Shown here piece by piece: positions 1 to 51,022 of a DNA stretch of 64,000 bases (within the stretch, counting starts at the first letter, position 1; the number at the start of each line of letters is the position of its first letter). The position numbers and the translations under genes are program-made. Location: the NCBI GenBank assembly GCA_002269645.1, contig NIVC01001392.1, forward strand, positions 62,001 through 126,000. Direction: 5' to 3'. The notes under the pieces are model-generated. The model had not been told where the DNA came from and did not search any database. It was given only the letters and a program-made list of their open reading frames with translations. Origin of the DNA: Macrostomum lignano (lineage: Eukaryota).

Positions 1-625
1 AGCAATCCCCCTTGATCCCTTGACCACCTGTGCATTCCCCCTTGTGATCCCTTGACCACCCGTACAATCCCCCTTGTGATCCCTTGACCACCTGTGCAAT
101 CCCCCTTGATCCCTTGACCACCTGTGCATTCCCCCTTGTGATCCCTTGACCACCTGTGCATTCCCCTTGTGATCCCTTGACCACCCGTACAATCCCCTTG
201 TGATCCCTTGACCACCCGTACAATCCCCTTGTGATCCCTTGACCACCCGTGCAATCTCCCTTGTGATCCCTTGACCACCCGTGCAATCCCCTTGTGATCC
301 CTTGACCACCCGTGCAATCTCCCTTGTGATCCCTTGACCACCCGTACAATCCCCTTGTGATCCCTTGACCACCCGTGCAATCCCCTTGTGATCCCTTGAC
401 CACCCGTGCAATCCCCCTTGTGATCCCTTGACCACCCGTGCAATCCCCCTTGTGATCCCTTGACCACCCGTGCTATCCCCCTTGATCCCTTGACCACCCG
501 TGCTATCCCCCTTGATCCCTTGACCACCCATGCAATCCCCCTTGTGATCCCTTGACCACCCGTGCATTCCCCCTTGTGATCCCTTGACCACCCATGCAAT
601 CCCCCTTGTGATCCCTTGACCACCT
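1..625. repeat. Minisatellite, ~30-32 bp unit (GTGCAATCCCCCTTGTGATCCCTTGACCACCC), truncated by window start
   Basis: Direct tandem repetition of GATCCCTTGACCACC at ~30-32 bp period; units vary mainly in C-run length. Confidence 0.97.
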
Positions 626-3609
626 GAGTGATTCAACTTGAACTTTCCCAGCAATTGGACTATTAAAGCTTAAAGCCAGAGACCATTATAAAGCACTACT
701 CTACGATAAGCCAATAATTCTACAGCTCGCTCATTTGGCATCCGGGCCCCTCGCAGATTGGATGCTGATCGAATGTCTCGTTAGTGGGAGTACCCGCACC
801 TCATCACCATCGCCTATGGCCAGCCCTAAAGTTTGAACTGCTCCCCTCCCTAGCCACTGGGCATTAGACCTTTCTTCTTAGTTCCCTATAGGAATTGGCG
901 GTCTGCCCTGCCTAGAGATTTCCTCTGATCGATGGTAAATCTCCGGCTTCAACTTCCCCTGGCCTGCTTCCCAATGCTCCTGTTTCACTTCTCAAGCTCC
1001 TCTCCCGCACTACTGCCTTTATTAGATAGATATATGGAATAGTTCACTGGGCCTGCTACTTTCATAATAGTAATGAAGAAATATATATAGCAGCAATTGA
1101 TTAAGAATTACTCTTATATTGTACTTTTAGTTATTATGATTGCAAGAATCTGACATTATACGCAGTAGTCTTAATCCCAAACTTTAACTTTACGAGTTCA
1201 AGTTTTGAAATTGGAAAGTTTTCTCACTTCTAAAGTCCTGTCTCTGTTAGGGCCTACATTTGCATACAAAGACAACTAATGCTGTCTATTCAGACTTGTT
1301 GCTGTTGTTAACCGGGGTTGCCTAATGCTGGCATGGATCAGTCTTAGTTATGCTCTGCAGCGGGAGTGATGGGTCCTCCCGCATATAAGTAATTGGAGGG
1401 CAAGACTCAAGGCTTGACCAGTGGGGGTTGGTTTACTGCGAACAACTAAACATTTTTGGCTTGACTCGCCGACTTAACGGTGAAACTGCGGTCTCAAATC
1501 AGGGTACTTCCGGCAGCCAGTGAGAGCCATTCCACAGGAGAAAAGCGAACACTACACCAAACTCCCTGTGCAGTGAGTCTCACTGGTAGGGTATCAACTT
1601 CTGGGGCTCATGCCTTACCAGCTTCTGTGGCTTAAAGCCTTCGAGATAGTCCTCTGACCAGCTCTCTTCACAGTTAGGTTCATCTAACGCAGAGGCAGCT
1701 CAAGCTCAATACTTGCGGTAATCTTCCAAAACGTAGACAGCTCGTTTGTGGGGTCATCTGCTGGATTGACTACATGGACACGCGCACACACCGGGTGATT
1801 AGTGCACCCACGATCTTGAAAAAGGGTGCTCCAAAACTTGCCTATCTGTTGTGTGATATATTACTTGACCAAAGGTATTGATATATAAAATTTGTTCTGA
1901 GACAGCCGCCAGCGTCGCTTCCTGGGATGCGAAAGGACCATATATTGAATTTCTTGAATAACCCGCCACAACTATACAATTCGTTTGCAATGCGCTTGTA
2001 CACGCCTGCGATTCTTATAAACCTGCCCGGACTTTCAACCCGATGAAAGATTCTGAGCTATCAGCAGCTATGTTTAACGCCGCGTCTGCTACTGTCGACT
2101 TCTTGCTTTACTCTCTGCGCCAATTTTTTCTCTCCATGCCGGCAAACAAGTTGGTTGGCCTGCCTTAGCGCGCGCACAGTTCCGCTGATTTAGGAGAGCC
2201 GCCAGCCGTCCTCCATCCTATTCGGTCGTCCCAAGTCCTGCCACGTTCGCATGATTAAATTTGCTCGCGCTTTTTTTTCCTGGCTTTCTACCAAAGCCTG
2301 CGGGATGACGAGGGGGGGGGGTGTAGAGACGTGGCAAGAAGGACAGGGACATGGAGAGAGAGTCTGACATGCTGAAGCAGCGTGCTTGTGGTCCAGCGCA
2401 CCCAGAAGTGGCTAGGCTCCCGCTACTGTCTATTGTGCCCGTCTCTTTCGCTCTTTTAAAGTGCTCGTCTGCTCTGCCTTCACTTGCTTCACATCATATT
2501 TCGTCTGACTTGCAGCTACGCACATTGACCCAGTGGGACTAGCCCTGGATTGAGATGCATTGCTAGCGCACAACTTAAATATTATACTTACTATGCAATT
2601 GCTTATCACACAGGAGCTACATACTGTACTGCGATATTTTTAGGTCAAATCTTCGTTGCGTCTGGCCTATAGAGACAAGTCTGATGGATTTACCGATTTA
2701 GCTTCCATTGAGCTTATGTGTTATATAAATAAAAGATGGTTGTGTCGATAAAACGATGCAAGATGATGGATGTCTTATGTGATGTACATCCATTATGAGA
2801 TCGTGAATCGCTTGAAGCCCCTTCAGTGTTCTCTAGTGTAGTTTGTATAGTCAGAGCTATCTCTCGGTGGTTTACAGCATTGAGGGTTCTGTAGTGTGTT
2901 ATCAGGGCTATCTGTTAGTGGTTTACAGCCTTGAGCATTCTGTAGTATGTAATCAGTGCTTTCTGTCAGTGGTTTACAGCTTTGAGCATTCGGTAGTATG
3001 TAATCAGTGCTTTCTGTCAGAAGTTTACAGCTGTCCTTTCCAAGATGTAGCTTCATTCAGAAATAAAGTTCTATTGTGCTCAATCTTAGCTTTCCCGGTT
3101 TCTGTGCCAGTGACTAACGGCATCTTGAAGAGATTGGCAGGTGTATTAAGTGGTTCATGCAGTTTAACTAAAGGAGTGCGCTTGGCCTGAAACCTCTGCA
3201 GCAATTTCGAAGAAAATCGTCTTTTCCCCCAGTCAGTCAGTCCTTCGGTGTTTCTCCAACCAACCGCAGTTCTGCAGCCTCTTAATCCTTTCCCCAACAC
3301 ACGTGCCGTCTCTCCCTCTCCCTTCCGCCCGTCTCTCTGTCCTCAATACCAAAGCTTCCAATGAGCCGCATGAAGGCGCATTTTCCTTCTCCATACATGC
3401 CTAATCTCCCTATCTCTCTAAGGCACTCATCCCAGTGTACCTATATTATCTTTTCTTTTGCGCACAGAGGATAGACTTGTGCCGAAAAGGTCATCCGATT
3501 TTATCTTGGCCCATTTATCCCCCTCGTGCCCTCTTATTGAATCGGATTGAGCATTAGCCAAGCTGAGTGAGTTAGCCGCGTCCAGTCAGTCGCTGCAGAA
3601 GATTAAAAA

Positions 3610-10749
<7,140 letters not shown>

Positions 10750-13455: not shown

Positions 13456-14470
13456 GTTTATTCAAGCAGTTGTCTGTCCGTTCACTCAGTTCAATCAAGC
13501 AGTTGTCTGTCCGTTCACTCAGTTCAATCAAGCAGTTGTCTGTCCGTTCATTCAGTTCAATCAATCAAGCAATTGTCTGTCCGTTCATTCAGTTCAATCA
13601 ATCAAGCAATTGTCTGTCCGTTCATTCAGTTCAATCAATCAAGCAATTGTCTGTCCGTTCATTCAGTTCAATCAATCAAGCAATTGTCTGTCCGTTCATT
13701 CAGTTCAATCAATCAAGCAATTGTCTGTCCGTTCATTCAGTTCAATCAATCAAGCAATTGTCTGTCCGTTCACTCAGTTCAATCAAGCAATTGTCTGTCC
13801 GTTCACTCAGTTCAATCAATCAAGCAATTGTCTGTCCGTTCACTCAGTTCAATCAAGCAGTTGTCTGTCCGTTCATTCAGTTTAATCAATCAAGCAATTG
13901 TCTGTCCGTTCATTCAGTTCAATCAAGCAGTTGTCTGTCCGTTCACTCAGTTCAATCAATCAAGCAATTGTCTGTCCGTTCATTCAGTTCAATCAATCAA
14001 GCAATTGTCTGTCCGTTCATTCAGTTCAATCAAGCAGTTGTCTGTCCGTTCACTCAGTTCAATCAAGAAATTGTCTGTCCGTTCACTCAGTTCAATCAAT
14101 CAAGCAATTGTCTGTCCGTTCACTCAGTTCAATCAATCAAGAAATTGTCTGTCCGTTCACTCAGTTAAATCAAGAAATTGTCTGTCCGTTCACTCAGTTT
14201 AATCAATCAAGCAATTGTCTGTCCGTTCACTCATTTCAATCAAGCAATTGTCTGTCCGTTCACTCAGTTCAATCAAGCAGTTGTCTGTCCGTTCACTCAG
14301 TTCAATCAAGAAATTGTCTGTCCGTTCACTCAGTTCAATCAAGCAGTTGTCTGTCCGTTCACTCAGTTCAATCAAGAAATTGTCTGTCCGTTCACTCAGT
14401 TCAATCAAGAAATTGTCTGTCCGTTCACTCAGTTCAATCAATCAAGCAGTTGTCTGTCCGTTCATTCAGT
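13456..14470. repeat. Minisatellite, 32/36 bp units
   Basis: TTGTCTGTCCGTTCA(C/T)TCAGTTCAATC(AATC)AAG(C/A)A(G/A) repeated; the two length classes differ by one AATC. Confidence 0.97.
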
Positions 14471-18154: not shown

Positions 18155-19194
18155 ATAATTTAAATTAAATTTTAGATTAATAATTATATTCAAGGTCCTC
18201 ATTATTTCTAATTTTATTAATTAAAATGGTCAATATATCATATCAGTTTTGAATTAGGCCTAGTTCATAGTTGCAAATATATATTATATATATTATGCAA
18301 TGCATATGCTATATGCCAATGTATGCTAATAGACTTTTATTGTATACAAAAATATATCAAAACAAAATTATAAATGATGATCTTTATATGCCAAGCTATA
18401 TACCAAAGGGTATGCCAGGCCCTTTTATATGCCAATTTGTATACCAATAGCGTGGTATAGGGCCTATACCAGATCTCTTTATACTTGTATACTAGAAAAT
18501 ATACATTATCTAGAGTCTGACATGTACATATAGGAATTTTGTGCCTTATAGGCATAGTTGATTGTATGCTATATATGGGAAGTTAGATTATATCCTAACT
18601 ATAAATGCCAATGCTAATGGACTTGAAAGGTCCATTGATAGATAGTGTCAATATGCAATGATTTTGTCTATTGTCTTTTTATTTGCTAGTAGGTCCTGGC
18701 TAGACAAAATAACTTTTTTGTAATATACAAAAAATGCAAATCTTATCATATTATGTATTTATCTCTCAATTCTATATTCAATTTATATATTTAATTATTT
18801 AATTTTATCTATATTATCTCTCAATTTTATATATAATACTTTTAATATTTTCATATTATGCACATTCAAACAAACTATTAAAATTAAAAACAAGCTTTCA
18901 GGGGCAAATGAAAGGGGACTGGGGGATTCATTTTCCTTCCCTTGAGATGGCCTACCCCCCTCCCCCCAAAGAAAATTTCTGGATCTGGGCCTAGCTATAT
19001 TGTAATTTGTAACCATATATTAGATCATTGTAGTAACCATATTGGCTATCTTTATCAAATTTGAAGTATTGGTTATAGTACATAAAAGTAAAGGTTGTCA
19101 AATTTATAGTGTATTGAGTTAGCTTGAACAACAATAAACATATCTGTATTGAAAAAAAATGAAATTTGCTCACAGGTAGAGCTGCGGCTTATTG

Positions 19195-20523
19195 ATGCAG
19201 GGTGCGGATGCTGGCGGCAGTGGCGCCTGGCTCAGCTCAGTTCTAACCAAGGCAGTGCACCGCTGCGCCCAGGAGAAACTCGACCGCAATCGGGACAGCC
19301 GCAGCCGGGGCTGGCTTCGTTATAACGAGTGGGAGCAGAAGAAGTGGAAACAGCAGCACTATGAATATTACGATGACGAGCTATTCCGCTGTTGCTACGC
19401 CATCAACAAGCTGCCCTGGTCTGTTGGCATCTCAGCGAAATCTCTAGAGGCGGTCTCCAATGTTGAAGCTGTCAATCGGGTGTTGCTAAGCAGCCAAACT
19501 GGCGTCTGCGTCGGCTGCGGCCCCGGCTCCGATGCTATCGCTCTGTTGGCTAGGCGGCACCACCACAGCGCCGGGCCAGCCGAGCCTCTCGTCATGTTCC
19601 TGGTAGACCGGTGCGGCGGCTGGCAGCCGCTAATCTCGAGTATAGATGAGCAGCTAAGAGAGCAGCGACTGCCATACAGCCTATGGTTCAAAGCTGGCTG
19701 TGTTAAAAATGCCGCCGACGCTGCCAAACTGCTGCCAGATGCTGACCTGGTGGTGCTGAGCTTTGCCCACTCAGTCAACGCCGAGCCAGACCTGTGGCCT
19801 CACCTGGCTGCCCGGTACAAGCTTGTACTGGTGATTGACATCACTTCCGAGGCACTGGCTGATGCACTTCAGCGGGTCGGCTTTACCGCCTGTCAGATTG
19901 AAAGCCAATCCGCTGTGTCTATCTTTTACTGCTTGGCCGGCAGCCAGCCAGTGTCAGCAGCTGGAGATGCCGGCAGCCAGCCAGTGTCAGCAGCTGGAGA
20001 TGCCGGCAGCCAGCCAGTGTCAGAAGCTGGAGATGCCGGCAGCCAGCCAGTGTCAGCAGCTGGAGATGCCGGCAGCCAGCCAGTGTCAGCAGCTGGAGAT
20101 GCCGGCAGCCAGCCAGTGTCAGAAGCTGGAGATGCCGGCAGCCAGCCAGTGTCAGCAGCTGGAGATGCCGGCAGCCAGCCAGTGTCAGAAGCTGGAGATG
20201 CCGGCAGCCAGCCAGTGTCAGAAGCTGGAGATGCCGGCAGCCAGCCAGTGTCAGCAGCTGGAGATGCCGGCAGCCAGCCAGTGTCAGAAGCTGGAGATGC
20301 CGGCAGCCAGCCAGTGTCAGCAGCTGGAGATGCCGGCAGCCAGCCAGTGTCAGCAGCTGGAGATGCCGGCAGCCAGCCAGTGTCAGAAGCTGGAGATGCC
20401 GGCAGCCAGCCAGTGTCAGCAGCTGGAGATGCCGGCAGCCAGCCAGTGTCAGCAGCCGAGGAGGCAGTCAACGACTCCAATCTCAGCGGACTATCAAAGC
20501 TGTGCGTGTGTGCGGAAGTCTAA
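19195..20523 (+). CDS. Putative class I SAM-dependent methyltransferase with C-terminal 11-aa tandem repeat; single exon as seen
   Basis: ATG at 19195 (ORF track starts at TTG 19192; a possible splice acceptor at 19200 could instead join an upstream exon). GC-rich ORF in AT-rich flanks. Motif-I-like VCVGCGPGSD, acidic end of strand 2 (MFLVDRCGGW), and motif-IV-like DADLVVLSF. The tail is 16 copies of GSQPVS(A/E)AGDA. Confidence 0.65.
   Translation: MQGADAGGSGAWLSSVLTKAVHRCAQEKLDRNRDSRSRGWLRYNEWEQKKWKQQHYEYYDDELFRCCYAINKLPWSVGISAKSLEAVSNVEAVNRVLLSSQTGVCVGCGPGSDAIALLARRHHHSAGPAEPLVMFLVDRCGGWQPLISSIDEQLREQRLPYSLWFKAGCVKNAADAAKLLPDADLVVLSFAHSVNAEPDLWPHLAARYKLVLVIDITSEALADALQRVGFTACQIESQSAVSIFYCLAGSQPVSAAGDAGSQPVSAAGDAGSQPVSEAGDAGSQPVSAAGDAGSQPVSAAGDAGSQPVSEAGDAGSQPVSAAGDAGSQPVSEAGDAGSQPVSEAGDAGSQPVSAAGDAGSQPVSEAGDAGSQPVSAAGDAGSQPVSAAGDAGSQPVSEAGDAGSQPVSAAGDAGSQPVSAAEEAVNDSNLSGLSKLCVCAEV
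19939..20460 (+). repeat. 33-bp coding minisatellite, 16 copies
   Basis: GGCAGCCAGCCAGTGTCAG(C/A)AGCTGGAGATGCC; a single C/A polymorphism gives Ala/Glu. Confidence 0.97.
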
Positions 20524-22362
20524 ATAACTAAGAGTTTTTGCAAGTGCTGTCTATGCATGAGATTTACGATTAAATGTTTTATTTTCTATGGAAAAATAAA
20601 GAAAATTGATGCATTCATTCCATTAAACTTTTATTCACCATCTTATTAATTCCGTTTTGTGACGAGATGTATGTATTTTACCTATGAGGAGTTTTCTTTT
20701 TTATAAAATTGCCAATTGCTCATTTTATTTAGGACAGTGTCTTGTGCCAGCTACTGACTGCTAGGGCGCCACGAATTACTTAAACTAATTGTTATTTATC
20801 TGCTTTCTGTCAATACCTAGATATTGCGAGTAACGAAAATATATCGTGAGTGGCGTTTGCAGTTGATTTAACAATGATCTTCTCTAATCTCCTGTAATAA
20901 ATGAATTGCAGTTTAATTTTTTTCTTTTACATTATTTTTAACTGATTAAGATGTAGAAAGACTTCCAGAAAGTTTTAAAGAAGATAAGGGAAATTTATGT
21001 TTATTCATAATTTACGTGACACAAATTTAGTATTTCAAAATGGATCAACGGAATTTGCTTGTTATGTACTTTTTGCGAGTCTTCCTGAGGTAGCTACTTG
21101 GTTCTATTTTTCATAGGATGAAGCAACCTCATCCTACGAGTGTAAATTCCTTCCAACGGTCCTCAGCGCACAAGTCATGCGACCTCTACTATCAATCAGC
21201 TGGTTGGCAACACCGGGGCAATCGATGATTACCTGACCTGCGCAAATCTTGCAGGCTAAAAAAAGAAGTTAGTTCACATTTTGTGTAGAAAGAAAAGCCT
21301 ATGTCAATTCGCTTGCAAGCCATTGCTATAAAAATTGCATATCGAGGTGACGAGATCCGTGTTTACTCTTGGCAAACTTGCACCGAGGCCGTGCAATCGA
21401 GGCCGGTGATTATTAATATTGTTTTTAGTCCACCCCTGACGCAATTGTCATTCGGGCAAATTGCTAATCAAACGATTTCTCTATGAAGCTTGCTGTTTCC
21501 CTAACGGGGCTTGTATGGTCTCTGCATACACTAATTTGCTAGCCGAAGCGTGCTTAGATAAACTGACTCTGGCCAGCGCGCGTTCACCTGCTTGATCCCG
21601 AGCTAAAAATCTATTTGAGGCTCTGCAGCTAATATCCTATAGAAGTTTTCACTGTGGCACAACAAACGCAATTTGCCTAAAAAAACCCCATACAAAACGC
21701 CATCAATGCAGCAGGCCTGAGCATGTGCGGTCTATTTGCTCACTAACATGCATACAAGACCTGTGTGTGTTAGCTTTGCGTGTATACTCTACAACTCCCG
21801 TATGCTATATAGAGAGTAAAGGCTTATACAGTGGACACCCTGCGGTGCTTGTGGTTACAGCTTCTTATTAATTTTCTGACGTCGACATCCCAAGCGGAGG
21901 AGCTGCAGGCCAGCTACCAGAAGATGGAGGGCCTCGCCCGTCAAGATCGATATATTCATGCGTTTAAAAGCTTACACGCCAAATCTGAAGCACTCTCTCC
22001 ACTTCTCTGTTCCTCTGTTTCTCAGCTCTCTTAAGTCTGGAACCAAGAAAAAATTAAGAAAGCATGCAAAGCCGGGCGCTTGAAATTCGATTATCTAATA
22101 TTACTACTATATGGACTAGGCTATAAACAACAGGGTCCATAATGCATTTTAAATTCGACCGCCTGTTTGTCGAAACATGTAGCTATATAAGAGCCGTAGC
22201 TAACTGCAGGCGTTGCATATTTCATTTAAACGCTCCGCCCTTGTCTGTAGCTTAGCTTAGCTTAGCGGAGTCGACGGGACTATTTTTGGACACGTTTATA
22301 TACATGTAGCTATGATAATTCAACCGCGCAGGATGTGCCACATGTGAGCTGCCGTCATTCTA

Positions 22363-24936: not shown

Positions 24937-26934
24937 ATGAAACGCAGAAGTCGACAGGACGCGGAACTCGCTGTCGCAATTGCAGCGCCCGACAGTGCGG
25001 CAATGAACAGCGCCGTAACTCTCCCGCTGCACAAGTACACCGTCCAGACCAATAATCGGGCCGTCGAGGCCGACGCTGACCCCACGGATGCCGACGCGGA
25101 AGCCTCTGCTGTAGCTTCTTTTGGAGCGGCGACTGCCGGGCAGTCGGACTTGGCCCCAGTCCGCAGCGCCCTGCACCGCCAGTTCATCTGCTTCTGCGAG
25201 AACACCACTATCCGAGGAATTCCGCGCATCATCAAATCGGAGAGCCGGCGCATCCGGTTGCTCTGGATCTTCTTCGTGGTAGCCCTGTTCGTCGCTTGCA
25301 TCCTCTGTCTGTCCTTCTTGACGCTGCAGTTCATCGAGTACGACGTGATGCACCCGCCCAGGGTGTTGAAGGACTACAGCTCGCCGTTTCCCTCCGTAAC
25401 GCTCTGCAATATGCGACCGCTGTCCTCTGAGGGCCGGCAGCAGCTGAGCCAGCAGGGCTGGAAATATCCGCGCGACTTCTCCGAATCGTTGGAACTGTTC
25501 GCCAGGAACCTATACTTCTATAACGAGTCAACGAAGTACGTTTACTACAACTTCTCCGGCTCGATGGGTTTCCCAGCCTACCTGGAGAGCCTGCCAAGAA
25601 GCGCCAGCCGCGACATCGGGCACACTCTCCAGGATTTTATTCTCGACTGTCGGGCGGTCATCCGGAACGGCAGTGCCCGCAACCTGAAATTCTGCAGTCC
25701 CGAGTACGTCTGGGGCGGCAAAGGCTCCGACATGTTCGCCGGTAACTTTCACGCCTTCCTGCACGGAAACTACATGAATTGCTACACCTTGGACTTGCAC
25801 GAGGAGTTGAGGGACAACACCACCATGGTAGAGATGGCCGTCTACCTAGACAACGAATGGAACCTCGACAATTTCAACTGCGTAGACTGTTACACCATGG
25901 ACATCAGCACGCAGCTGTCTGGAGCCGTGCTCACCATCCACTCGGGCGACACCTACCCGGACGTGAATCACGAGGCCATCCACCTGAAAGCTGGCTCCCT
26001 GACCGAGGTGAAGCTCAAACACGTGTTGAACGTTCAGAAGCAGGCGCCCTACGGCCGGTGCTCGCAGGACACGCAGAGGAACCTTAACCTATTCGGTCGG
26101 GAGTACAAATACAGCGAGGACGCCTGCCGACAGGCCACAATCCAGCGGGACATTCTCAATACCTGCGGCTGCCAGGCCATCGAGTATCCGCTGGTGCGCG
26201 AATCGAATTTCACCTACTGCACCGGCCTGGAGGAGTTTCTGCGCAGCGACGGCTGCAACTGGGCCACGGCCGAGAACGATCAGAAACGGCTGGCCGACTG
26301 CAGTGCCACCCTGCAGAAAGTCTACGGCTATATCCGCTGCAAGAATGACGTCATTTCCAAGTACTCCAAGGACGTGGTGGAGAGCTGCACGCTGCCCTGC
26401 TCGTTTTACAGCTACCAGACCGAGCGGTCGACATCCGACTGGCCGACCAGGTCGTTCCAGCTGCGCCTGCTCAACAGCCGGGTCTACAGCCGCCTGCTGA
26501 ACAGGAAGGAGATGAAGGCCTACAGGAAGGCTATAGAAAAGCTGAATAATAACGGCAGCATCCAGGAGGCCTACGAGATGCTGAAGCACGAGAACCTGCT
26601 GGAACGGAACCTGCTGTCTATCCAGCTGATCCGGCCGAACTTCGATCTGCACAAGGTTGAGGAAAAAGAGGTCCTGTCTCTGACCTCCTTCCTGAGCCAG
26701 ATTGGCGGCTTGTTCTCTATATTCGTCGGCCTGACAATGATCTCCGTGGTAGAGCTAATCGACTTTTTCATCCACTGCTACGAAATTTGCACCAGGCAGA
26801 GCCGCGGCGTTGGCAGAGCCTCCGCCGTCAGGAGGTGCGATGGAGCGGCCAGCCGCTCGGAGGCGGACGTCCTGCTGCCGGCTGTGGCCGCCGGGCCGCG
26901 ACCGCATCAGAAGCTGCCGAATGCTGACAGCTGA
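24937..26934 (+). CDS. DEG/ENaC (amiloride-sensitive sodium channel family) subunit, 665 aa, intronless
   Basis: Continuous ORF with FCENTT-x-RG pre-TM1, hydrophobic TM1, FPSVTLCN, NCYT, GAVLTIH, PYGRC, a Cys-rich thumb (YSEDAC...CGC...C..PC), and TM2 FLSQIGGLFSIFVGLTMISVVELIDF. Confidence 0.95.
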   Translation: MKRRSRQDAELAVAIAAPDSAAMNSAVTLPLHKYTVQTNNRAVEADADPTDADAEASAVASFGAATAGQSDLAPVRSALHRQFICFCENTTIRGIPRIIKSESRRIRLLWIFFVVALFVACILCLSFLTLQFIEYDVMHPPRVLKDYSSPFPSVTLCNMRPLSSEGRQQLSQQGWKYPRDFSESLELFARNLYFYNESTKYVYYNFSGSMGFPAYLESLPRSASRDIGHTLQDFILDCRAVIRNGSARNLKFCSPEYVWGGKGSDMFAGNFHAFLHGNYMNCYTLDLHEELRDNTTMVEMAVYLDNEWNLDNFNCVDCYTMDISTQLSGAVLTIHSGDTYPDVNHEAIHLKAGSLTEVKLKHVLNVQKQAPYGRCSQDTQRNLNLFGREYKYSEDACRQATIQRDILNTCGCQAIEYPLVRESNFTYCTGLEEFLRSDGCNWATAENDQKRLADCSATLQKVYGYIRCKNDVISKYSKDVVESCTLPCSFYSYQTERSTSDWPTRSFQLRLLNSRVYSRLLNRKEMKAYRKAIEKLNNNGSIQEAYEMLKHENLLERNLLSIQLIRPNFDLHKVEEKEVLSLTSFLSQIGGLFSIFVGLTMISVVELIDFFIHCYEICTRQSRGVGRASAVRRCDGAASRSEADVLLPAVAAGPRPHQKLPNADS

Positions 26935-28039
26935 CGGGAAATCCGATTCACTCTTGGCGACTCTTGACTGGTTGAGCAGAGGATTGGGACTTTGAGATAC
27001 ATGGTGAAGGGTCGGCAAGGGCCTCAAAGGAGGAGTTTCTCTCGTCCGAGCATGCCGGACACTGGAAACATTTTCCAGTTTTTGCTGATAGATCCCGAAG
27101 GTCCTTCAATCTGCTGATAGAAAAGAAGTCCACCGGGACATTGGGTCAGTGAAAAGACAGTAGATGTACATTTATTCTCCCGCTGTTAGCTGTTGCTGTT
27201 GAGGACAGGCGGTTCCCCATCTCTAGATACTATAATTCAGTAATTCATTGTTGTAACTCACTGTTGCCATGGTTGCAGTATCCTCATTTTTGGTATGAAT
27301 CAAAATCAACTTTTTTGTGTTCGTGCTTATATAGTTTTTTGTCTGGTCTCTCTGGCTGTCTCTATGGAGGCCTCGCCTGTTTTAGCGTCGTCAAATATCT
27401 AGCTAGAAGAGCCGAGTCCGGCTGGCTGATGCAGTGCTGCTCTCTATAAAAATCAATCGATAGCTTATTAGCAGAAATAAAACCTGAGGAAGAAACTGAG
27501 CGATTCGGGAGCTTAGCATTGGACTCGAAGCTGTCTGTTTTTTTCGTTTTTACGCTACATATCGGTAACTGACCCTTCAGTTTATTTTGCTTGCTGGGGT
27601 GGGGGATTTGTGGACTGCTAGGCTTTCTCTCAAAATGCAGTTATTTAAATTCTAATACCTGAAATATTCAGAGTCGGCTATAAAAACCAATAAGGTTTTT
27701 TAACGAAAGCATGGAGTGGAATTGTTAGGTAGCTAATTAACTATGCGTTTAAAGGCTGCTGTCGCGAGCAATACCCAAAAAATGCTAGGAATAATAAATC
27801 AAAGCAACGAACCCATTCGCCGGGGGAGAGTAGAGGGGACGACAGAAAGAGAAAGCAACGATTTAATCCGTTTGCTTCATACTGAAGCAGCCAATTCCCA
27901 AATGACTTGCACTAATGGGGCGGATCTGAACGGGCCTTAGAAGTCGCCTCTGCTTTTTATCTGTTTCAATGCCTGCCTTTTTAATTTACTGAGGGTTGCC
28001 TTATTTTTTAGTAATTAATAAAAGAAGTAATGAGGCAGA

Positions 28040-28552
28040 AATGAGGGAGAGGTGAGGGAGAGGAGCGGGAGAGGTGAGGGAGAGATGAGGGAGAGGTGAG
28101 GGAGAGGTGAGGGAGAGGTGAGGGAGAGATGAGGGAGAGGTGAGGGAGAGGTGAGGGAGAGGTGAGGGAGAGGTGAGGGAGAGGTGAGGGAGAGGTGAGG
28201 GAGAGAAGCGGGAGAGGAGCGGGAGAGGTGAGGGAGAGGTGAGGGAGAGGTGAAGGAGAGGTGAGGGAGAGGTGAGGGAGAGGTGAGGGAGAGGAGCGGG
28301 AGAGATGAGGGAGAGGTGAGGGAGAGGTGAGGGAGAGGTGAGGGAGAGGAGCGGGAGAGGTGAGGGAGAGGTGAGGGAGAGGTGAGGGAGAGGTGAGGGA
28401 GAGGTGAGGGAGAGGTGAGGGAGAGGTGAGGGAGAGGAGCGGGAGAGGTGAGGGAGAGGTGAGGGAGAGGTGAGGGAGAGGTGAGGGAGAGGAGCGGGAG
28501 AGGTGAGGGAGAGGTGAGGGAGAGGTGAGGGAGAGGTGAAGGAGAGGTAGGA
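28040..28552. repeat. 11-bp purine-rich minisatellite (GAGGGAGAGGT)n
   Basis: Direct repeats with occasional GAGCGG/GATG variants. Confidence 0.97.
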
Positions 28553-29525: not shown

Positions 29526-29528
<3 letters not shown>

Positions 29529-29575
<47 letters not shown>

Positions 29576-30465
29576 ATTGAGGGAGACAAGAGAGAGGAGA
29601 GAGAATTGAGGGAGACAAGAGAGAGGAGAGAGAATTGAGGGAGACAAGAGAGAGGAGAGAGAATTGAGGGAGACAAGAGAGAAGAGAGAGAATTGAGGGA
29701 GACAAGAGAGAGGAGAGAGAATTGAGGGAGACAAGAGAGAGGAGAGAGAATTGAGGGAGACAAGAGAGAGGAGAGAGAATTGAGGGAGACAAGAGAGAAG
29801 AGAGAGAATTGAGGGAGACAAGAGAGAAGAGAGAGAATTGAGGGAGACAAGAGAGAGGAGAGAGAATTAAGGGAGACAAGAGAGAGAATTGAGGGAGACA
29901 AGAGAGAGGAGAGAGAATTGAGGGAGACAAGAGAGAGGAGAGAGAATTGAGGGAGACAAGAGAGAGGAGAGAGAATTGAGGGAGACAAGAGAGAGGAGAG
30001 AGAATTGAGGGAGACAAGAGAGAAGAGAGAGAATTGAGGGAGACAAGAGAGAGGAGAGAGAATTGAGGGAGACAAGAGAGAGAATTGAGGGAGACAAGAG
30101 AGAGGAGAGAGAATTGAGGGAGACAAGAGAGAGAATTGAGGGAGACAAGAGAGAGGAGAGAGAATTGAGGGAGACAAGAGAGAAGAGAGAGAATTGAGGG
30201 AGACAAGAGAGAGGAGAGAGAATTGAGGGAGACAAGAGAGAGAATTGAGGGAGACAAGAGAGAGGAGAGAGAATTGAGGGAGACAAGAGAGAGGAGAGAG
30301 AATTGAGGGAGACAAGAGAGAGGAGAGAGAATTGAGGGAGACAAGAGAGAGGAGAGAGAATTGAGGGAGACAAGAGAGAAGAGAGAGAATTGAGGGAGAC
30401 AAGAGAGAAGAGAGAGAATTGAGGGAGACAAGAGAGAGGAGAGAGAATTGAGGGAGACAAGAGAG
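29529..30465. repeat. (GA)n microsatellite followed by a 29-bp purine-rich minisatellite
   Basis: (GA)n at ~29529-29566, then GAGAGAATTGAGGGAGACAAGAGAGAGGA repeats with some 22-bp shortened units. Confidence 0.97.
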
Positions 30466-30954
30466 GGAGAGGATTATATTCCGGTTTTCCATTTCACGCG
30501 CCCAAACTTGTATCAAAGTCCATGAGCGCGAGAATTCGTCCAGTTTTGTAAAAGAATCCGGGAAATACGAGGTAAATGCGAATTCGGAAACCGGCACCGA
30601 TCCTGATTGAGGAAGATAAAATGCAGATGGGAGCCGAGGATTATCTGTGCTGGTGCAGCGTTTCCAAGCATCGAATTACTGTGTCTGTATAGATATTATT
30701 TATTTAATACTCCGAATCAGTGGAGATAAAAGAATCGGGGGAGGGGGGCCGAGGGTTCCAGTTGCTATGCAGACCGGCTTTTGGTAATAATCGAGCGTTT
30801 TTTATGGCTGTAATTCACCCGCGCGTGGGAAACTTGGCCGAAGAAATCGAATAAAGTTTCGGTTTTCTTTCCTAGAACAAATTGTGCTGGACTTGCTGCT
30901 TTTGCACTGGGAATCTGTTTATTTGTTCGGCCATTTCTGGCACGTTTTAACCTC

Positions 30955-32907: not shown

Positions 32908-33402
<495 letters not shown>

Positions 33403-34760: not shown

Positions 34761-37700
34761 GCACGCGAAGGCGTATTCAGCATGCCAGTGAAGTATGAGA
34801 CAGACCAGGCCTATGGGCCTGGTAAAGGCTGGTGGGAGGTCTGCACCCTCTATTTGCCGCTGGCAGCCGCAGACCCCCCCCCCCCCAGGCTGTCTCGCAA
34901 GCCGACCCAGGGGTACCCGTCCCCGCGTGTGTTCAAGGCAGACCCTAGGGCTGCTGGACTGACTGGGCTCCGGCGCTGGGGACCCATCCAGTGGCTTGGG
35001 CCGAATTTGGGTATGCGGGTCTGGCTCACCAGCCTGCAGGCCGTGGTACTGCTCAACGTACCCTCTAATGCCTAAGGTGTTTGACCGTGCCGATGGGCTG
35101 GAAGGCCGGGGAGTAGTCCGGTCGCTAGCGGTCCCTTTTTCAAACCGGTTGGCTTGGGGTGTCGGCCAGTCGGGTACTCAACTCGCGTAACGAGTAGCCC
35201 TCCCCCGCTTTTCAGCTATGGCCACTAACGCCACCATCCCAAAAGAAACTGGCCCACCGAAATCAGCCGCTCCGGTAGCTACCACTGGTAGCTCCAACGC
35301 CCAACCTGGTCCAACCGGGCCAGCTGACGCTGCCGCCGAGCACCCTGGCCGCCAGTCTAGCCGACCGCGCACGGCCGAGTCCCGACGGCAGCAAAACATC
35401 TGCCGCAACCGTAAGCGGCAGGAGAAGCGGGCTGCTGCTGCGTCCGCGGAGGGCGGGCAAGCCGCGGTGAGGCCTTTGGGAGCCACCGCGGCGGGGAAGC
35501 CCTCTGGGGAGTCCGGTGGCGCGGCTGGGCCGTCAGGAACCGCCGTGTCCTCGGACTCTCAGGGGGGCAACCCTGCCGGCCTACCGCCTTCCAAGGACAA
35601 AGCGGCCCCGCTCAAGACCTCCGAGCCCTACGCCTCCAAGGTCAAGCAGCCGCTGCAACCCGCCGTGATGATCCTCGGTGGAGACTTCGATCTGACGCCC
35701 GAGCAGCTCGACGTCGCGCGCACTATGGCGCACCATCGACGAGGGCCTGCTCAATCTAACACTGGAGGGCGTCTTCGTGGACATCTTTAAGTCCACCAAG
35801 GCGAACGGGTGCATCCTACTGTGGTGCAAATCCGAGGAGAGCACCCAGCTCCTGCGGGATCAGCTGCCCAAGTTCGACTGGCACAGCGACCTGGGCCAGC
35901 TGACCTTCGCCTTGGAGAGCGAGCGGCCGAAGACCATCCGCCATCGGATTTGGGTCCCGGCCGACAGTGCGATCAAGTCCAGGGAGCACCTGCGGCAGCT
36001 CCTGCTCAAGCGGCACCCGGATCTTGACGCCAGTGGTCTTGTGTACCACAACACGGTCCGCAAGGCTCAAACCTCCACTTTGGTCTCCACCAACTGACCA
36101 TCCTCCGCTGTCAGGAGGGCAAGGTGGAGTCTAAGAACGACGGGAAGCGTGCCGCTCCCGGAGCTGGGGCTCAGGCTCCGCCGGCCAAGCGGCAGCAGCA
36201 ACCCGATCCCGAGCCTAATAAGGCTATTCGCGCTGCTGAGTCTGCCTCGCGCGGACGTAGACCCGCCCGCAGTAACCGGCGGTCCGGGCTAATCCAGCGC
36301 GCACTTGACGAAGCTCAGTCTATGAGACTTCACCTCGAGCAGACTCATGCCGCTCGTAAAACCACACAAAGCCAGCCGAAGGAGCTGGACGACGGCACGG
36401 CTCAACCATCCAACTGGTGGATTGCCACCAGGAGGATGCTGCCGGCCGAGCTCAGACTCCCGACGGCGGGGCGCAAGGCAAAGGCAGCAGCCGTACCCCA
36501 GTCGCTGGGGAGGAGGGCGGTGTAGCGCGGCTAGGTGACTCACCTGCCGTGGGCGCCGTGTCCGCCTCCGCGGCGGCTGGGGAGGCGGCTGAGCCTGAGC
36601 CAATGGAAATTGGCGACTCAACTCTCACCGATGAGGCTGAAAATGGGTTGCCTTTCTCCTCCCCTGGACAGTAGACATGACTGTCTCCCAGGGCATTCAC
36701 TGCTTGCAGGTCAACCTGCAGCATAGCATTGCTGCTTCAGTCAACCTCTTGAAGCACACTGACCAATACGCACCAGGGATTATCCTTATCCAGGAACCGT
36801 GGATGCTAAGGGGCAGGCAGCCCCCAACATGTCCCCACCGGCTGCCAGTGTTTAACCGCAGGCACCCGGAGGGAAACCTGACACCAAGATCCTGCATCAT
36901 GGTGTCCAGTTCTATTAACGCATGGCTCAGATCGGACCTGTCCACCAGGGAAATCTGCGTCATCCAATCTGAAGACATACTCCCTGGGAGGACTACCCTC
37001 ATCACTTCGGTTTACCTACCGGGCGACGGCGAGATGATCCCAGGTCGAGCTTTGCTCCACCAGAAATTATGAGCTGCTTGTGGCAGGCGATATCAATGCC
37101 CACCACACCCACTGGGGCAGTTCTGATATTAACCAGAGAGGTAAAGACTTCCTGGCTTATATAACTATTACTAGCCTTAAGTTCTGTAACTCGGGTAGCA
37201 CCCCTACCTTCAATGACGGACGCCGATCGGAGGTGCTGGATGCCACCCTTGCCACGCCCAGGCTCTTCCGGAGCACTAGAGAGTGGCGGGTGCTTCCTAA
37301 GGCGTCCCTCTCCGATCACAAGTTCATCTCTTTCACGCTGGCCGGCGCCCGAAACGGAACGGAAACGGAATGCTAGGAATACCGATTGGACCGCCTTCAG
37401 GCTTGCCTTGGAGGAGACCTATCGTTGCACTAGCGCTCCAGTCTCCATCAACACCTGCGAGGAAGCAGGTGAATTTTGCGGCCGTACTCACGGACTCGCT
37501 CACTGCTGCCTTCGAAGCCTCATGCCCACTAAAGGCATATAAAGGCAAACAGTCGGCCCCATGGTGGAACCCGCAGCTTGGCGACCTCCGTCGCAGAGCT
37601 AAAAGACTTCACAGTATGGCCCAAAAAACTAAAAACCCGGCCGACCAAACCGCCTACCTGAACTCTATCCACGAGTTCAAGAGGCAGGTTAGGAACACAA

Positions 37701-40649: not shown

Positions 40650-41714
40650 AGCCTACCAGTGCCTTCAACTCCACTATTTCACTCATTCTACATCTTGCGA
40701 TTTCGTCAATGGCTTAATCTGCGCACATTCACTGTGCTGAAATAATGTCCCAGCTAGCTCGTATGTGTACCATATACAATGCGCCATTACCCATTATTAG
40801 TTTGATCACAGATTTGCTTTACTTCACAGAATTAAAGAATCATCATTAAAAAACAATTCCTAAAACTGGAATCCTCAAAGTCCTAAAACTGGCCTAACTG
40901 GCCTAGCTCGCGAGGGGCTAACAGCATAAACTGATCAACAGCATAGGGGAAAGTGCAACTCTACAGTTCTAGAAACTTCCATGCACCACGCATTCACCGC
41001 GACGGAATCCAACGAAAAAGAGCAATAAATTATTTACAGCCGATGCTTTATGATCGCATGAGCTTCTGCCTTTTACGGCAAAAAAATTTGGTGCGCGTTT
41101 CGAATACCGAGCATGCGCAGGATTGGCGGCGCCTCTTAATTATCATAATTTATTCAGAGCTGAATATTTGCCCAGCCGCAGCTTCCAGGCCGCGGCAAAC
41201 AGTATTCACCAGCTGGGACGCTTTCTCCATCTCTTTCAGCTGCAGCTTTGCCACCCTTCCACCCTTTAAATGATGGTGAATAATGATTTGGCAAAAGTCA
41301 ACCGCGGGCCTGCCAAGCCTCCAGCAGCAGTAGCCATTGGATTTCTTTTTAGAGCTGGAGATCTGCTGCAAACTGCGGCCTCTACCCCCCCCCCCCAATG
41401 GGATTCTCACGGTGGAGCAGGCCGCTGATTGAGAAGCGGTCTCCGGGGCCCCTCATTTAATATTCTATGCGCCTGCACGTTGTGGCTTCATCAAGTCGTA
41501 GGCAGCCAATCCATAATTACTCCACTCGCTCAGTCTCTGTGTCATAATTAATTGCCAGGGGGGGCTGGCAGTGAAATTTAATGCATAGCCAACAATTGGC
41601 GCGCACGAAACTTACTGACAGGGTCATAAATTAATGATGACCGATTGAAGCACTTCAGATTTCCGATTTCTGGGGAGGATTGATTCATTGGTTGCCAACT
41701 TGTGAGGCTCTGGA

Positions 41715-50204: not shown

Positions 50205-50740
50205 CGGTATCGGTAACCCAAACTTAATGTCGGAAACCTGTTTTCTAAATGTCGGAAACCCGTTTTCTAAATGTCGGAAACCCGTTTTTTAAATGTCGGA
50301 AACCTGTTTTCTAAATGTCGGAAACCCGTTTTCTAAATGTCGGAAACCTGTTTTCTAAATGTCGGAAACCCGTTTTCTAAATGTCGGAAACCCGTTTTCT
50401 AAAAGTCGGAAATCCGTTTTCTAAATGTCGGAAACCCGTTTTCTAAATGTCGGAAACCTGTTTTCCAAATGTCGGAAACCTGTTTTCTAAATGTCGGAAA
50501 CCTGTTTTCTAAATGTCGGAAACCTGTTTTCTAAATGTCGGAAACCTGTTTTCTAAATGTCGGAAACCTGTTTTCTAAATGTCGGAAACCCGTTTTCTAA
50601 ATGTCGGAAACCCGTTTTCTAAAAGTCGGAAATCCGTTTTCTAAATGTCGGAAACCCGTTTTCTAAATGTCGGAAACCCGTTTTCTAAATGTCGGAAACC
50701 CGTTTTCTAAATGTCGGAAACCCGTTTTCTAAATGTCGGA
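50205..50740. repeat. 22-bp minisatellite (AAATGTCGGAAACC(C/T)GTTTTCT)
   Basis: About 24 direct repeats located downstream (3') of WAVE. Confidence 0.97.
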
Positions 50741-51022
50741 AGAGAAACAAGTTTTCGATGACCAGCCGGTTTTCAAAAGTATTTTTGAGGGCTCACAGGA
50801 TTTCCCATATTGTTTCTTGGTTGTCCCACCTCATACTAATTAAAATTTCATTTTCCAATATTGGACACCCAATATAGGCTGGGTGTAAAATAAACATGTA
50901 GAGCAGTAACTAATAGCTGAATAACAATATTTAATAATAATAATACTCTGGAAAAGAATATTTAACACCAAACAGGAGAACACAACACGCAACTAGCTAG
51001 CAAATAGTTAGCAATAAATTTT

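What the first reader, a model, noticed from the sequence alone, without database searches (positions are those of the whole stretch)
19195..19940. Orphan intronless SAM-dependent methyltransferase-like gene
Seen: a compact GC-rich ORF abruptly embedded in very AT-rich DNA, with GCGPGSD, an acidic residue ending the next strand (LVD) followed by W, and DADLVVLSF. Established: this is the motif order of class I Rossmann methyltransferases. I do not recognise it as any named DNA, RNA or protein methyltransferase orthologue. Inference: an uncharacterised small-molecule or RNA methyltransferase, possibly retrocopied or horizontally acquired. This is the best candidate in the window for an undescribed activity.
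Basis: partly seen in the sequence, partly recalled or inferred. Interest (0 to 1): 0.7.

Follow-up and report, generated by a model that had tools for sequence, protein, structure and literature searches.

The report
Flatworm-specific methyltransferase-like gene with repeat tail
This is a real, probably expressed gene of the flatworm Macrostomum lignano that encodes a SAM-dependent methyltransferase fold with an acidic repeat tail; it is a divergent member of an uncharacterised family seen here only in flatworms, and it does not look like a bacterial import or a retrocopy.

Summary
The ORF does not stop at 19940, though. It runs from 19195 to 20523 (442 aa): a 248-aa methyltransferase-like domain, then 15.8 in-frame copies of a 33-bp repeat (GDAGSQPVS[A/E]A), then a short tail.

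The window is Macrostomum lignano scaffold NIVC01001392.1. An AlphaFold model built from a 9-sequence family alignment is confident (pLDDT 89.5). All 50 listed PDB matches are class I SAM methyltransferases or close relatives, with TM only 0.35-0.5.

The gene is not an orphan. An exhaustive HMMER search and a profile search find a family of about 300-aa proteins in trematodes, cestodes, monogeneans and M. lignano. None has a functional name, and no Pfam family passes its cut-off. This copy is a divergent paralogue: it keeps 42 of 77 family-conserved positions, including every SAM-motif residue.

Horizontal transfer and retrocopy are not supported. The nearest relatives are flatworm proteins, neighbouring coding ORFs are equally GC-rich, a paralogue and the adjacent channel gene are also single-exon, and there is no poly(A) tract.

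Three collinear copies exist in the assembly. Their methyltransferase domain is 3-13 times less diverged than the flanks. The substrate is unknown.

The parts
19177..19179 (+). In-frame TAG stop that closes the reading frame 16 nt upstream of the ATG. The preceding 'cacag' (19171-19175) is a possible splice acceptor, untested.
   Evidence: Sequence read. The ORF list shows the frame opening at 19192.
19195..20523 (+). Complete ORF of 442 codons plus a TAA stop. It corresponds to the M. lignano gene models of the Mlig033321/Mlig028439 type.
   Evidence: P0002 (441 aa, starting at codon 2) is 100% identical. The start position agrees with the orthodox paralogue: query residues 11-238 align to residues 9-241 of P0009.
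19195..19491 (+). N-terminal all-helical cap, residues 1-99. It carries family-conserved aromatic and basic residues: Y43, W46, K52, Y59, F64, R65 and Y68.
   Evidence: AlphaFold model secondary structure shows helices H9-29, H33-47, H56-60, H62-87 and H91-99. Conservation count.
19498..19938 (+). Rossmann-type methyltransferase core, residues 102-248, with seven strands alternating with helices and ending in a beta6/beta7 hairpin.
   Evidence: Strands E102-106, E132-138, E161-167, E185-189, E210-215, E231-235 and E241-247. Foldseek gives 130 PDB matches at E<=1e-3, and all 50 listed are methyltransferases or close relatives.
19504..19533 (+). Motif I, the glycine-rich SAM loop: V104-CVGCGPGS-D113. 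G107, G109 and P110 are invariant in the family.
19600..19623 (+). End of strand beta2 with the invariant acidic residue D138 (the expected ligand of the SAM ribose hydroxyls), followed by the invariant W143.
   Evidence: The role of D138 is inferred from the general class I methyltransferase architecture.
19684..19692 (+). W164-F165-K166 on strand beta3. It is conserved in the family, and W164 is invariant.
19735..19764 (+). Motif II on strand beta4: P181-DADLVVLS-F190. P181, A183, D184 and S189 are invariant.
   Evidence: My own comparison with the classical P-x-(F/Y/A)-D motif II consensus is from memory.
19936..20456 (+). In-frame 33-bp tandem repeat, 15.8 copies of only two unit variants (GCA or GAA at one codon). 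It encodes GDAGSQPVS[A/E]A. Copy number differs between the three genomic copies of the gene.
   Evidence: The tail (residues 249-442) has pI 4.05 and net charge -24.
20457..20523 (+). Non-repeat C-terminal tail (…EEAVNDSNLSGLSKLCVCAEV) and the TAA stop. It is conserved in all three copies with one N/S change.
20595..20600 (+). AATAAA candidate polyadenylation signal 72 nt after the stop. ATTAAA also occurs at 20569 and 20622. No encoded poly(A) tract follows.
   Evidence: Its function is not tested.

Best explanation
Window 19195-20523 is a single-exon, native M. lignano gene. It is one of three collinear genomic copies.

Architecture:
- An N-terminal helical cap (residues ~9-99).
- A seven-stranded Rossmann core (residues ~102-248).
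- A C-terminal, strongly acidic, very likely disordered tail built from a young in-frame 33-bp minisatellite.

Shown: the fold, the conserved motifs, membership of a family seen here only in flatworms, and the syntenic triplication.

Inferred mechanism: the enzyme binds S-adenosylmethionine through the G107-x-G109-P-G111 loop. D138 at the end of beta2 would contact the ribose hydroxyls, and P181/A183/D184 on beta4 would lie near the methionine moiety. The conserved aromatic and basic residues of the helical cap would close over the cofactor and form the acceptor pocket. A methyl group would be transferred to an acceptor that is still unidentified.

Place in the family: this copy is a fast-evolving Macrostomum paralogue of the 'orthodox' gene Mlig019032. 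It keeps the cofactor-binding residues but has changed about 45% of the other family-conserved positions, so its acceptor specificity may have shifted.

Substrate guess (weak): a small molecule or a protein side chain rather than nucleic acid. The family is acidic (pI 5.2-6.1), I recognise no known RNA-binding module and Pfam detects none, and many of the top structural matches, including the best one, are cap-bearing small-molecule O-, C- or N-methyltransferases.
For: Identity and expression:
- The window is M. lignano NIVC01001392.1, and the encoded protein is 100% identical to P0002.
- GenBank gene models for this assembly were derived from RNA-seq transcript assemblies (PMC5730564). A named model at the two sister copies therefore implies transcription.

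Fold:
- The AlphaFold model from the 9-sequence alignment has pLDDT 89.5 and pTM 0.88, with the class I strand/helix order.
- Foldseek against the PDB gives 130 hits at E<=1e-3. The top ones are 3mcz, Coq5 (4obw), DnrK, SibL, NNMT, Trm5a and METTL21D.

Family:
- Exhaustive phmmer gives E-values from 5.8e-27 to 3e-07 to flatworm proteins.
- The profile search returns 26 clusters. Every cluster that carries an organism name is from Platyhelminthes.
- Invariant residues are G107, G109, P110, D138, W143, W164, L180, P181, A183, D184, S189, W201, V213 and D215.
- This copy keeps 42 of 77 conserved positions, against 67 of 74 for Mlig019032. It sits on a long branch outside the orthodox clade.

Constraint:
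- All three collinear copies have an intact ORF. Repeat-number differences are multiples of 33 bp.
- The MTase domain is 0.13-0.54% diverged with no indels. The flanks are about 1.75% diverged with 7-12 gap blocks (P = 0.004 and 2e-5).

Native origin: GC and GC3 resemble neighbouring genes.

Charge: acidic pI across the family.
Against: - No biochemical evidence exists for any family member.
- Differences among the three copies are 2 synonymous and 3 non-synonymous. Protein-level purifying selection on this paralogue is therefore not demonstrated, and gene conversion could also explain the low divergence.
- Loss of 35 of 77 conserved positions is compatible with relaxed constraint or a non-catalytic role.
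- The only Pfam signal is sub-threshold and points to an rRNA methyltransferase family: Methyltransf_34 (Bmt6), E 0.02-0.03.
- A third paralogue, Mlig009940, carries an RS/RD-rich tail typical of nuclear RNA-processing proteins.
- Both of the last two points argue against my small-molecule/protein guess.
- I saw no read-level expression data, and the 5' end is unresolved because the models are '5'-partial' from codon 2.
Confidence: 0.72

Rival explanations
1. It is an RNA methyltransferase, for example a distant Bmt6-like rRNA base methyltransferase or an enzyme linked to mRNA or snRNA processing, rather than a small-molecule or protein methyltransferase.
For: - The best Pfam family for two family members is Methyltransf_34 (PF11312). 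Both match the same profile segment, 85-145, at E 0.018-0.033.
- PF11312 is the family of the 25S rRNA U2843-N3 methyltransferase (PMC5307852).
- tRNA and rRNA methyltransferases (Trm5a, TrmR, RumA, GidB, an m4(2)C synthase) are among the top Foldseek matches.
- Paralogue Mlig009940 fuses the domain to an RS/RD-rich tail.
Against: - The Pfam scores are 12-15 bits against a 26-bit cut-off and cover only the generic SAM-binding segment.
- The family is acidic, with pI 5.2-6.1. This copy is -25 net overall, although its MTase domain alone is near neutral (pI 6.65).
- I recognise no known RNA-binding module, and Pfam detects none.
- Many of the top structural matches, including the best one, are small-molecule methyltransferases.
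Confidence: 0.25
2. It is a decaying or non-catalytic duplicate. The gene would be a redundant paralogue under relaxed constraint, possibly a pseudoenzyme, whose 3' half has been invaded by one of the many minisatellites of this genome.
For: - Only 42 of 77 family-conserved positions are kept, and the gene sits on a long branch.
- Differences among the copies are 2 synonymous and 3 non-synonymous.
- The repeat units are nearly identical, so the array is very young, and the window is full of unrelated tandem arrays.
- The repeat is open in three frames, so its openness alone proves nothing.
Against: - Every SAM-motif residue that is invariant in the family is retained.
- All three copies keep an intact 386-441-aa frame, with repeat changes only in multiples of 33 bp and a conserved post-repeat tail.
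- The domain is 3-13 times less diverged than the flanks and has no indels.
- Gene models are transcript-derived.
Confidence: 0.2
3. One reading: the gene was acquired horizontally from bacteria, or is a recent retrocopy dropped into AT-rich DNA.
For: - It is single-exon, and there is a sharp GC step against the upstream flank.
- The Hymenolepis orthologue has introns: 312 aa spread over 6.75 kb. The family was therefore intron-bearing somewhere in flatworm history.
Against: - All identifiable relatives are flatworm proteins. There is no bacterial hit at E<=1e-3 among 1.84 billion representatives; the one other hit, P0016, is a short low-complexity match.
- GC and GC3 are like neighbouring native genes.
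- There is no poly(A) tract after the 3' end.
- Upstream similarity to the spliced leader is not significant: 19% of random windows score as well.
- The orthodox paralogue and the adjacent ASC gene are also single-exon.
- The only copies are three collinear ones in the same AdoHcyase-X-ASC context. That fits the known redundancy of this assembly and not dispersal.
Confidence: 0.04

Closest known systems
Uncharacterised flatworm protein family (for example M. lignano Mlig019032/PAA88952.1, Hymenolepis diminuta VDL19351.1, Clonorchis sinensis CSKR_107643, Fasciola gigantica FGIG_10362, and unnamed Schistosoma and Taenia products)
   Same: - Same two-part domain (helical cap plus Rossmann core) over about 230 residues.
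- 25-34% identity, with E-values down to 6e-27.
- Identical invariant motif residues.
- Several full-length members examined, including Mlig019032, also have a short acidic or Ser/Pro-rich C-terminal tail.
   Different: - This copy is a divergent paralogue that keeps 55% of conserved positions, against about 90% for orthodox members.
- Its tail has been expanded into 15.8 copies of an 11-aa repeat.
- The parasite orthologue that was checked (Hymenolepis) has introns.
Class I (Rossmann-fold) SAM-dependent methyltransferases with a helical cap, such as the Burkholderia O-methyltransferase-family protein 3mcz, yeast Coq5 (4obw), DnrK (1tw2), SibL (4qvg) and human NNMT (7wmc)
   Same: - Same core topology and the same motif I / acidic beta2 / motif II order.
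- Foldseek probability 1.00, with E-values from 1e-7 to 1e-5.
   Different: - Only 11-18% identity, and TM-scores of 0.35-0.5.
- No sequence-level hit in the PDB.
- The catalytic residues of those enzymes cannot be mapped with these tools, and the N-terminal cap is not specifically matched.
Pfam Methyltransf_34 (PF11312; family of the yeast 25S rRNA U2843-N3 methyltransferase Bmt6)
   Same: It is the best-scoring Pfam family for this protein and for Mlig019032, and both match the same profile segment covering motif I to helix B.
   Different: - Scores are 12-15 bits against a 26-bit cut-off, and only about 60 of 304 profile positions are matched.
- Seven of the nine members scanned do not hit it at all.
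- This is a lead, not evidence of membership.
N2227 / carnosine N-methyltransferase family (the automatic UniRef name given to several cestode orthologues)
   Same: UniRef labels the Hymenolepis, Taenia, Mesocestoides and Rodentolepis orthologues 'N2227 domain-containing protein'. Both are class I methyltransferases.
   Different: - The Pfam scan of those orthologues and of this protein reports no N2227 family even at E<=10.
- No carnosine methyltransferase chain appears in the PDB sequence searches or among the top 50 fold matches.

Membership tests
Class I SAM-dependent methyltransferase superfamily | Seven-stranded Rossmann-like sheet with alternating helices and a C-terminal beta6/beta7 hairpin | tested here: met
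   The AlphaFold model (pLDDT 89.5) has seven strands in the expected order. Foldseek finds 130 PDB matches at E<=1e-3, and all 50 listed are methyltransferases or close relatives.
Class I SAM-dependent methyltransferase superfamily | Glycine-rich motif I (GxGxG) after strand beta1 | tested here: met
   V-G107-C-G109-P-G111-S-D113. G107, G109 and P110 are invariant across the family.
Class I SAM-dependent methyltransferase superfamily | Acidic residue at the C-terminal end of beta2 (ribose ligand) | tested here: met
   D138 ends strand E132-138 and is invariant.
Class I SAM-dependent methyltransferase superfamily | Motif II on beta4 (P-x-(F/Y/A)-D followed by hydrophobic residues) | tested here: met
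   P181-D-A183-D184-LVVL lies on strand E185-189, and P181, A183 and D184 are invariant. The consensus motif is recalled from memory.
Class I SAM-dependent methyltransferase superfamily | Binds SAM and transfers a methyl group | not testable with these tools
   This needs binding and turnover assays.
Flatworm-restricted uncharacterised methyltransferase-like family (unnamed) | Significant full-domain sequence similarity and shared invariant residues | tested here: met
   phmmer E-values from 5.8e-27 to 3e-07 over query residues ~11-246. There are 14 invariant columns. The profile search returns the family from trematodes, cestodes and monogeneans.
Flatworm-restricted uncharacterised methyltransferase-like family (unnamed) | Orthology to the single-copy gene of parasitic flatworms | tested here: not met
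   In the NJ tree, Mlig019032/012833/030803 group with the parasite genes, while the window gene branches outside on a long branch. It is a paralogue, not the orthologue.
Pfam Methyltransf_34 (PF11312, Bmt6-type rRNA methyltransferase) | Score at or above the Pfam gathering cut-off (26 bits) | tested here: not met
   12.3-14.7 bits, E 0.018-0.095, partial match only.
N2227 / carnosine N-methyltransferase | Detectable match to the family profile or to solved members | tested here: not met
   No such Pfam hit at E<=10 for this protein or the cestode orthologues, and none in the PDB searches.
Processed retrocopy | Encoded poly(A) tract at the 3' end, an intron-bearing parent gene, and a dispersed location | tested here: not met
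   There is no A-run after the AATAAA. The nearest paralogue is only 34% identical and is itself single-exon. The three copies are collinear duplicates, not dispersed. Target-site duplications were not searched for.
Horizontally transferred bacterial gene | Nearest relatives are bacterial, and composition is foreign to the host genome | tested here: not met
   All named relatives are Platyhelminthes. GC and GC3 are similar to neighbouring genes.

The most novel reading that the evidence does not exclude
The window gene and its relatives define a previously undescribed methyltransferase family confined to Platyhelminthes. It is present in schistosomes, liver flukes and tapeworms and is undetectable by sequence in other organisms. 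Its acceptor would be lineage-specific, either a metabolite or a protein/RNP target. In Macrostomum the family has radiated into three lineages. One has an RS-rich tail. This one has a rapidly expanding acidic repeat tail, and its changed cap and pocket residues may reflect a new specificity.
Probability: 0.3. Interest if true: 0.55.

Novelty: new member of a known kind. Interest (0 to 1): 0.35.

Why it matters
On its own this is one more uncharacterised Rossmann methyltransferase, already deposited as a 'hypothetical protein'.

Its value is in what it points to. It belongs to a compact enzyme-like family that is conserved across all major parasitic flatworm groups and was not detected outside flatworms in a single-sequence search of 1.84 billion representative proteins. 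The family has no Pfam model, no solved structure and no known substrate.

M. lignano is transgenic- and RNAi-tractable, which makes it a convenient place to find out what the family does.

The in-frame minisatellite that varies between the three homeologous copies is also a clear small example of how this repeat-rich genome builds disordered protein tails.

Tried and rejected
- **NCBIfam scan:** no hit.
- **PDB sequence searches:** the single protein found nothing, and two family profiles returned only noise such as RIG-I, NDRG and an RxLR effector at E>0.03.
- **Single-sequence AlphaFold:** too poor to use, pLDDT 47. It was replaced by the alignment-based model.
- **First word-indexed profile search:** the untrimmed alignment returned only the query's own cluster, probably because low-complexity words swamped the candidates. 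A trimmed core alignment worked.
- **Cluster members P0004-P0007:** these 50-57-aa ENA peptides are unrelated AT-rich ORFs, a clustering artefact, and were ignored.
- **P0016:** this 1162-aa cysteine-rich repeat protein matches only residues 34-82 and was dismissed as compositional.
- **Spliced-leader remnant idea:** upstream 'TTATTG-ATG' resembles the end of the M. lignano spliced leader, but 19% of random windows score as well.
- **Functional link to the upstream AdoHcyase-family gene:** the adjacency is kept only in the three recent duplicates. It is absent at the paralogue locus and at the Hymenolepis orthologue, so I treat it as coincidence.
- **Literature and supplement searches:** searches for the gene identifiers and for N2227 in flatworms found nothing.
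Full report
**What is in the sequence.** Its first ATG is at 19195, and it runs uninterrupted to a TAA at 20521-20523, giving 442 codons. All the quoted motifs are there:
- GCGPGSD at residues 107-113.
- LVD at 136-138, with W at 143.
- DADLVVLSF at 182-190.

It is where a perfect in-frame 33-bp tandem array begins (19936-20456, 15.8 copies, 97% matches). The array encodes GDAGSQPVS[A/E]A about 16 times. Only two unit variants exist, differing at one base. A 21-residue unique tail ending CVCAEV follows. The tail half of the protein has pI 4.05 and net charge -24.

**Source and copies.** The protein is 99-100% identical to three Macrostomum lignano proteins: PAA48315.1, PAA66068.1 and an unnamed 441-aa product. 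The window maps to GCA_002269645.1 scaffold NIVC01001392.1, at about 62001-126000.

All three copies lie in the same context, which is an AdoHcyase-family gene, then about 8.5 kb, then this gene, then about 4.4 kb, then an ASC/DEG-ENaC channel gene. The loci are collinear over more than 18 kb at 93-98% identity. This fits the known redundancy of this assembly, which comes from a line with extra large chromosomes (PMC5730564). The copies differ in repeat number (386, 397 and 441 aa), always by whole 33-bp units.

GenBank models for this assembly come from a genome-guided RNA-seq transcriptome that was filtered for coding potential (PMC5730564). Transcription is therefore implied, but I did not see reads.

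The models are flagged 5'-partial and begin at codon 2. The ATG at 19195 is still the likely start, because the orthodox paralogue's N-terminus aligns within two residues of it. A spliced-leader junction at AG 19199-19200 would also place the leader's AUG in frame. This is untested.

**Fold.**
- Pfam gives only a sub-threshold hit to Methyltransf_34 (12-15 bits against a 26-bit cut-off).
- NCBIfam and PDB sequence searches give nothing useful.
- A single-sequence AlphaFold model was poor (pLDDT 47).
- With a 9-sequence family alignment the model became confident (pLDDT 89.5, pTM 0.88). It shows a helical cap (residues 9-99) followed by seven strands alternating with helices and ending in a hairpin.
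- Foldseek against the PDB gave 130 matches at E<=1e-3. All 50 listed are class I SAM-dependent methyltransferases or close relatives, including 3mcz, Coq5, DnrK, SibL, NNMT, Trm5a and METTL21D. Identity is 9-18% and TM-scores are 0.35-0.5.

The methyltransferase fold is therefore well supported, but no solved enzyme is a close relative.

**Not an orphan.** An exhaustive phmmer search of 1.84 billion representatives found eight real relatives, with E-values from 5.8e-27 to 3e-07. Cluster look-up shows them to be:
- M. lignano paralogues: Mlig019032/012833/030803 (about 304 aa) and Mlig009940 (1217 aa).
- Hymenolepis, Protopolystoma, Trichobilharzia and Heterobilharzia proteins.
- One Logan contig and one JGI contig of unknown origin.

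A trimmed core profile then retrieved 26 clusters from Schistosoma, Trichobilharzia, Clonorchis, Paragonimus, Fasciola, Echinostoma, Taenia, Hymenolepis, Rodentolepis, Mesocestoides, Spirometra and Cichlidogyrus. All are unnamed, 'hypothetical', or carry automatic UniRef labels. The 'N2227 domain' label on some cestode entries is not reproduced by a Pfam scan.

Fourteen residues are invariant across the first alignment: G107, G109, P110, D138, W143, W164, L180, P181, A183, D184, S189, W201, V213 and D215. These cover the classical motif I, the acidic beta2 end and motif II.

**Position within the family.** In a neighbour-joining tree the Mlig019032 group sits at the base of a clade that follows the expected order (Macrostomum, then monogenean, then cestodes plus trematodes). 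The window gene and Mlig009940 are long separate branches. The window protein keeps 42 of 77 positions that are at least 85% conserved in the other members. The figures are 67 of 74 for Mlig019032 and 29 of 74 for Mlig009940. The retained positions include all cofactor-motif residues. The changes cluster in the cap and around beta4/beta5: FSFANT becomes LSFAHS, and VLDG-KE becomes VIDITSE. This is what one expects from a duplicate that keeps SAM binding while its acceptor side drifts or adapts.

**Constraint.** Between the three copies the 741-bp domain differs at 1-4 sites (0.13-0.54%) with no indels. In contrast, 3.7 kb of flanks differ at about 1.75% with 7-12 gap blocks (binomial P = 0.004 and 2e-5). 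The few coding differences are 2 synonymous and 3 non-synonymous. Protein-level selection on this paralogue is therefore not demonstrated, and gene conversion cannot be excluded.

**Horizontal transfer and retrocopy.**
- No bacterial relative was found.
- The GC step is the normal contrast between coding and intergenic DNA here. The ASC ORF is 58.5% GC, ORF 51023-52744(-) is 65%, and the paralogue CDS is 52% GC in 33-44% GC flanks.
- The ASC neighbour and the orthodox paralogue are also single-exon. The Hymenolepis orthologue, in contrast, spans 6.75 kb with introns.
- Downstream there are AATAAA/ATTAAA signals (20569, 20595, 20622) but no poly(A) tract.
- The upstream resemblance to the spliced-leader 3' end is not significant (leader sequence from PMC8629364).

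**Function.** Shown so far are the fold, the motifs and the family. I infer a SAM-dependent methyl transfer, with the helical cap forming the acceptor pocket.

The acceptor is unknown. I lean weakly towards a small molecule or a protein, for three reasons. The family is acidic (pI 5.2-6.1). I recognise no known RNA-binding module, and Pfam detects none. Many of the top structural matches, including the best one, are cap-bearing small-molecule methyltransferases.

Two observations point the other way. The only Pfam signal is to the Bmt6 rRNA m3U family (PF11312; identity of the family from PMC5307852). Paralogue Mlig009940 carries an RS/RD-rich tail.

The AdoHcyase-family neighbour is tempting, but the adjacency is not conserved at the paralogue locus or at the Hymenolepis locus.

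**Verdict.** The gene is a native, divergent member of an uncharacterised methyltransferase-like family seen here only in flatworms, extended by a young coding minisatellite. It is not an orphan, a retrocopy or a horizontal acquisition. It is of modest interest by itself. The family behind it is the more interesting object.

Noticed in passing
window ~1-10749 (+), with tRNA at 9240-9314 (+): The upstream neighbour is an AdoHcyase-family gene; ORF 9718-10188 matches AdoHcyase_NAD at 1.8e-32. Its products in the sister loci are 518-586 aa, longer than I recall for a canonical SAH hydrolase, so it may be an AHCYL/IRBIT-like form. A tRNA-Arg(TCT) gene (70 bits) lies within the span of this gene, presumably in an intron.
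   Followed up: partly
window 24937-26934 (+): A single-exon 665-aa ORF encodes an amiloride-sensitive sodium channel (ASC/DEG-ENaC) protein, Pfam E 1.1e-58. The sister loci carry shorter models of 507 and 383 aa.
   Followed up: partly
window 56461-64000: A satellite array of a 23-bp unit (GTGGCTCTTTAATGTTTGACATG) covers more than 7.5 kb and runs off the window end. It has strong AT skew and is interrupted by short 18-bp-unit arrays at 55998-56215 and 58540-58756.
   Followed up: no
window 41713-43788; also 2-624, 5835-6540, 7051-7825, 13462-14470, 28031-28548, 29527-30471, 32908-33402, 44567-45016, 50226-50741: The window is dense in unrelated minisatellites, several with extreme strand skew (GC skew up to 0.84 at 42-43 kb). 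Long 'ORFs' in these arrays, such as 41578-43743(-), are repeat artefacts. The coding 33-bp array in the methyltransferase gene is one instance of a genome-wide tendency.
   Followed up: partly
window 39285-40073 (+), inside the GC-rich block ~35000-41000: An ORF matches RNase H (2.2e-07) and RVT_3. It is probably a retroelement remnant.
   Followed up: no
window 51023-52744 (-): A 573-aa, 65% GC ORF has only a weak WH2-motif hit (E 8.4e-04, below the cut-off). It is probably another single-exon gene of unknown function.
   Followed up: no
P0015 / P0023 (M. lignano Mlig009940, other scaffolds): A third paralogue carries the same methyltransferase-like domain at about residues 68-296 of a 1217-aa protein. 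The rest is low-complexity and includes an RD/RS-rich stretch and a KE-rich C-terminus, as seen in nuclear RNA-processing proteins.
   Followed up: partly
window 20503-20520: The protein ends in CVCAEV. Its last four residues have the outline of a CaaX box, with a second cysteine two residues upstream. The motif is conserved in all three copies but absent from the paralogues. Lipidation is speculative.
   Followed up: no
cluster of P0001 (members P0004-P0007): Four 50-57-aa ENA peptides (MNKFEKNYNHIELV...) are filed in the same 90% cluster as the M. lignano protein but are unrelated to it. This is a database clustering artefact.
   Followed up: yes
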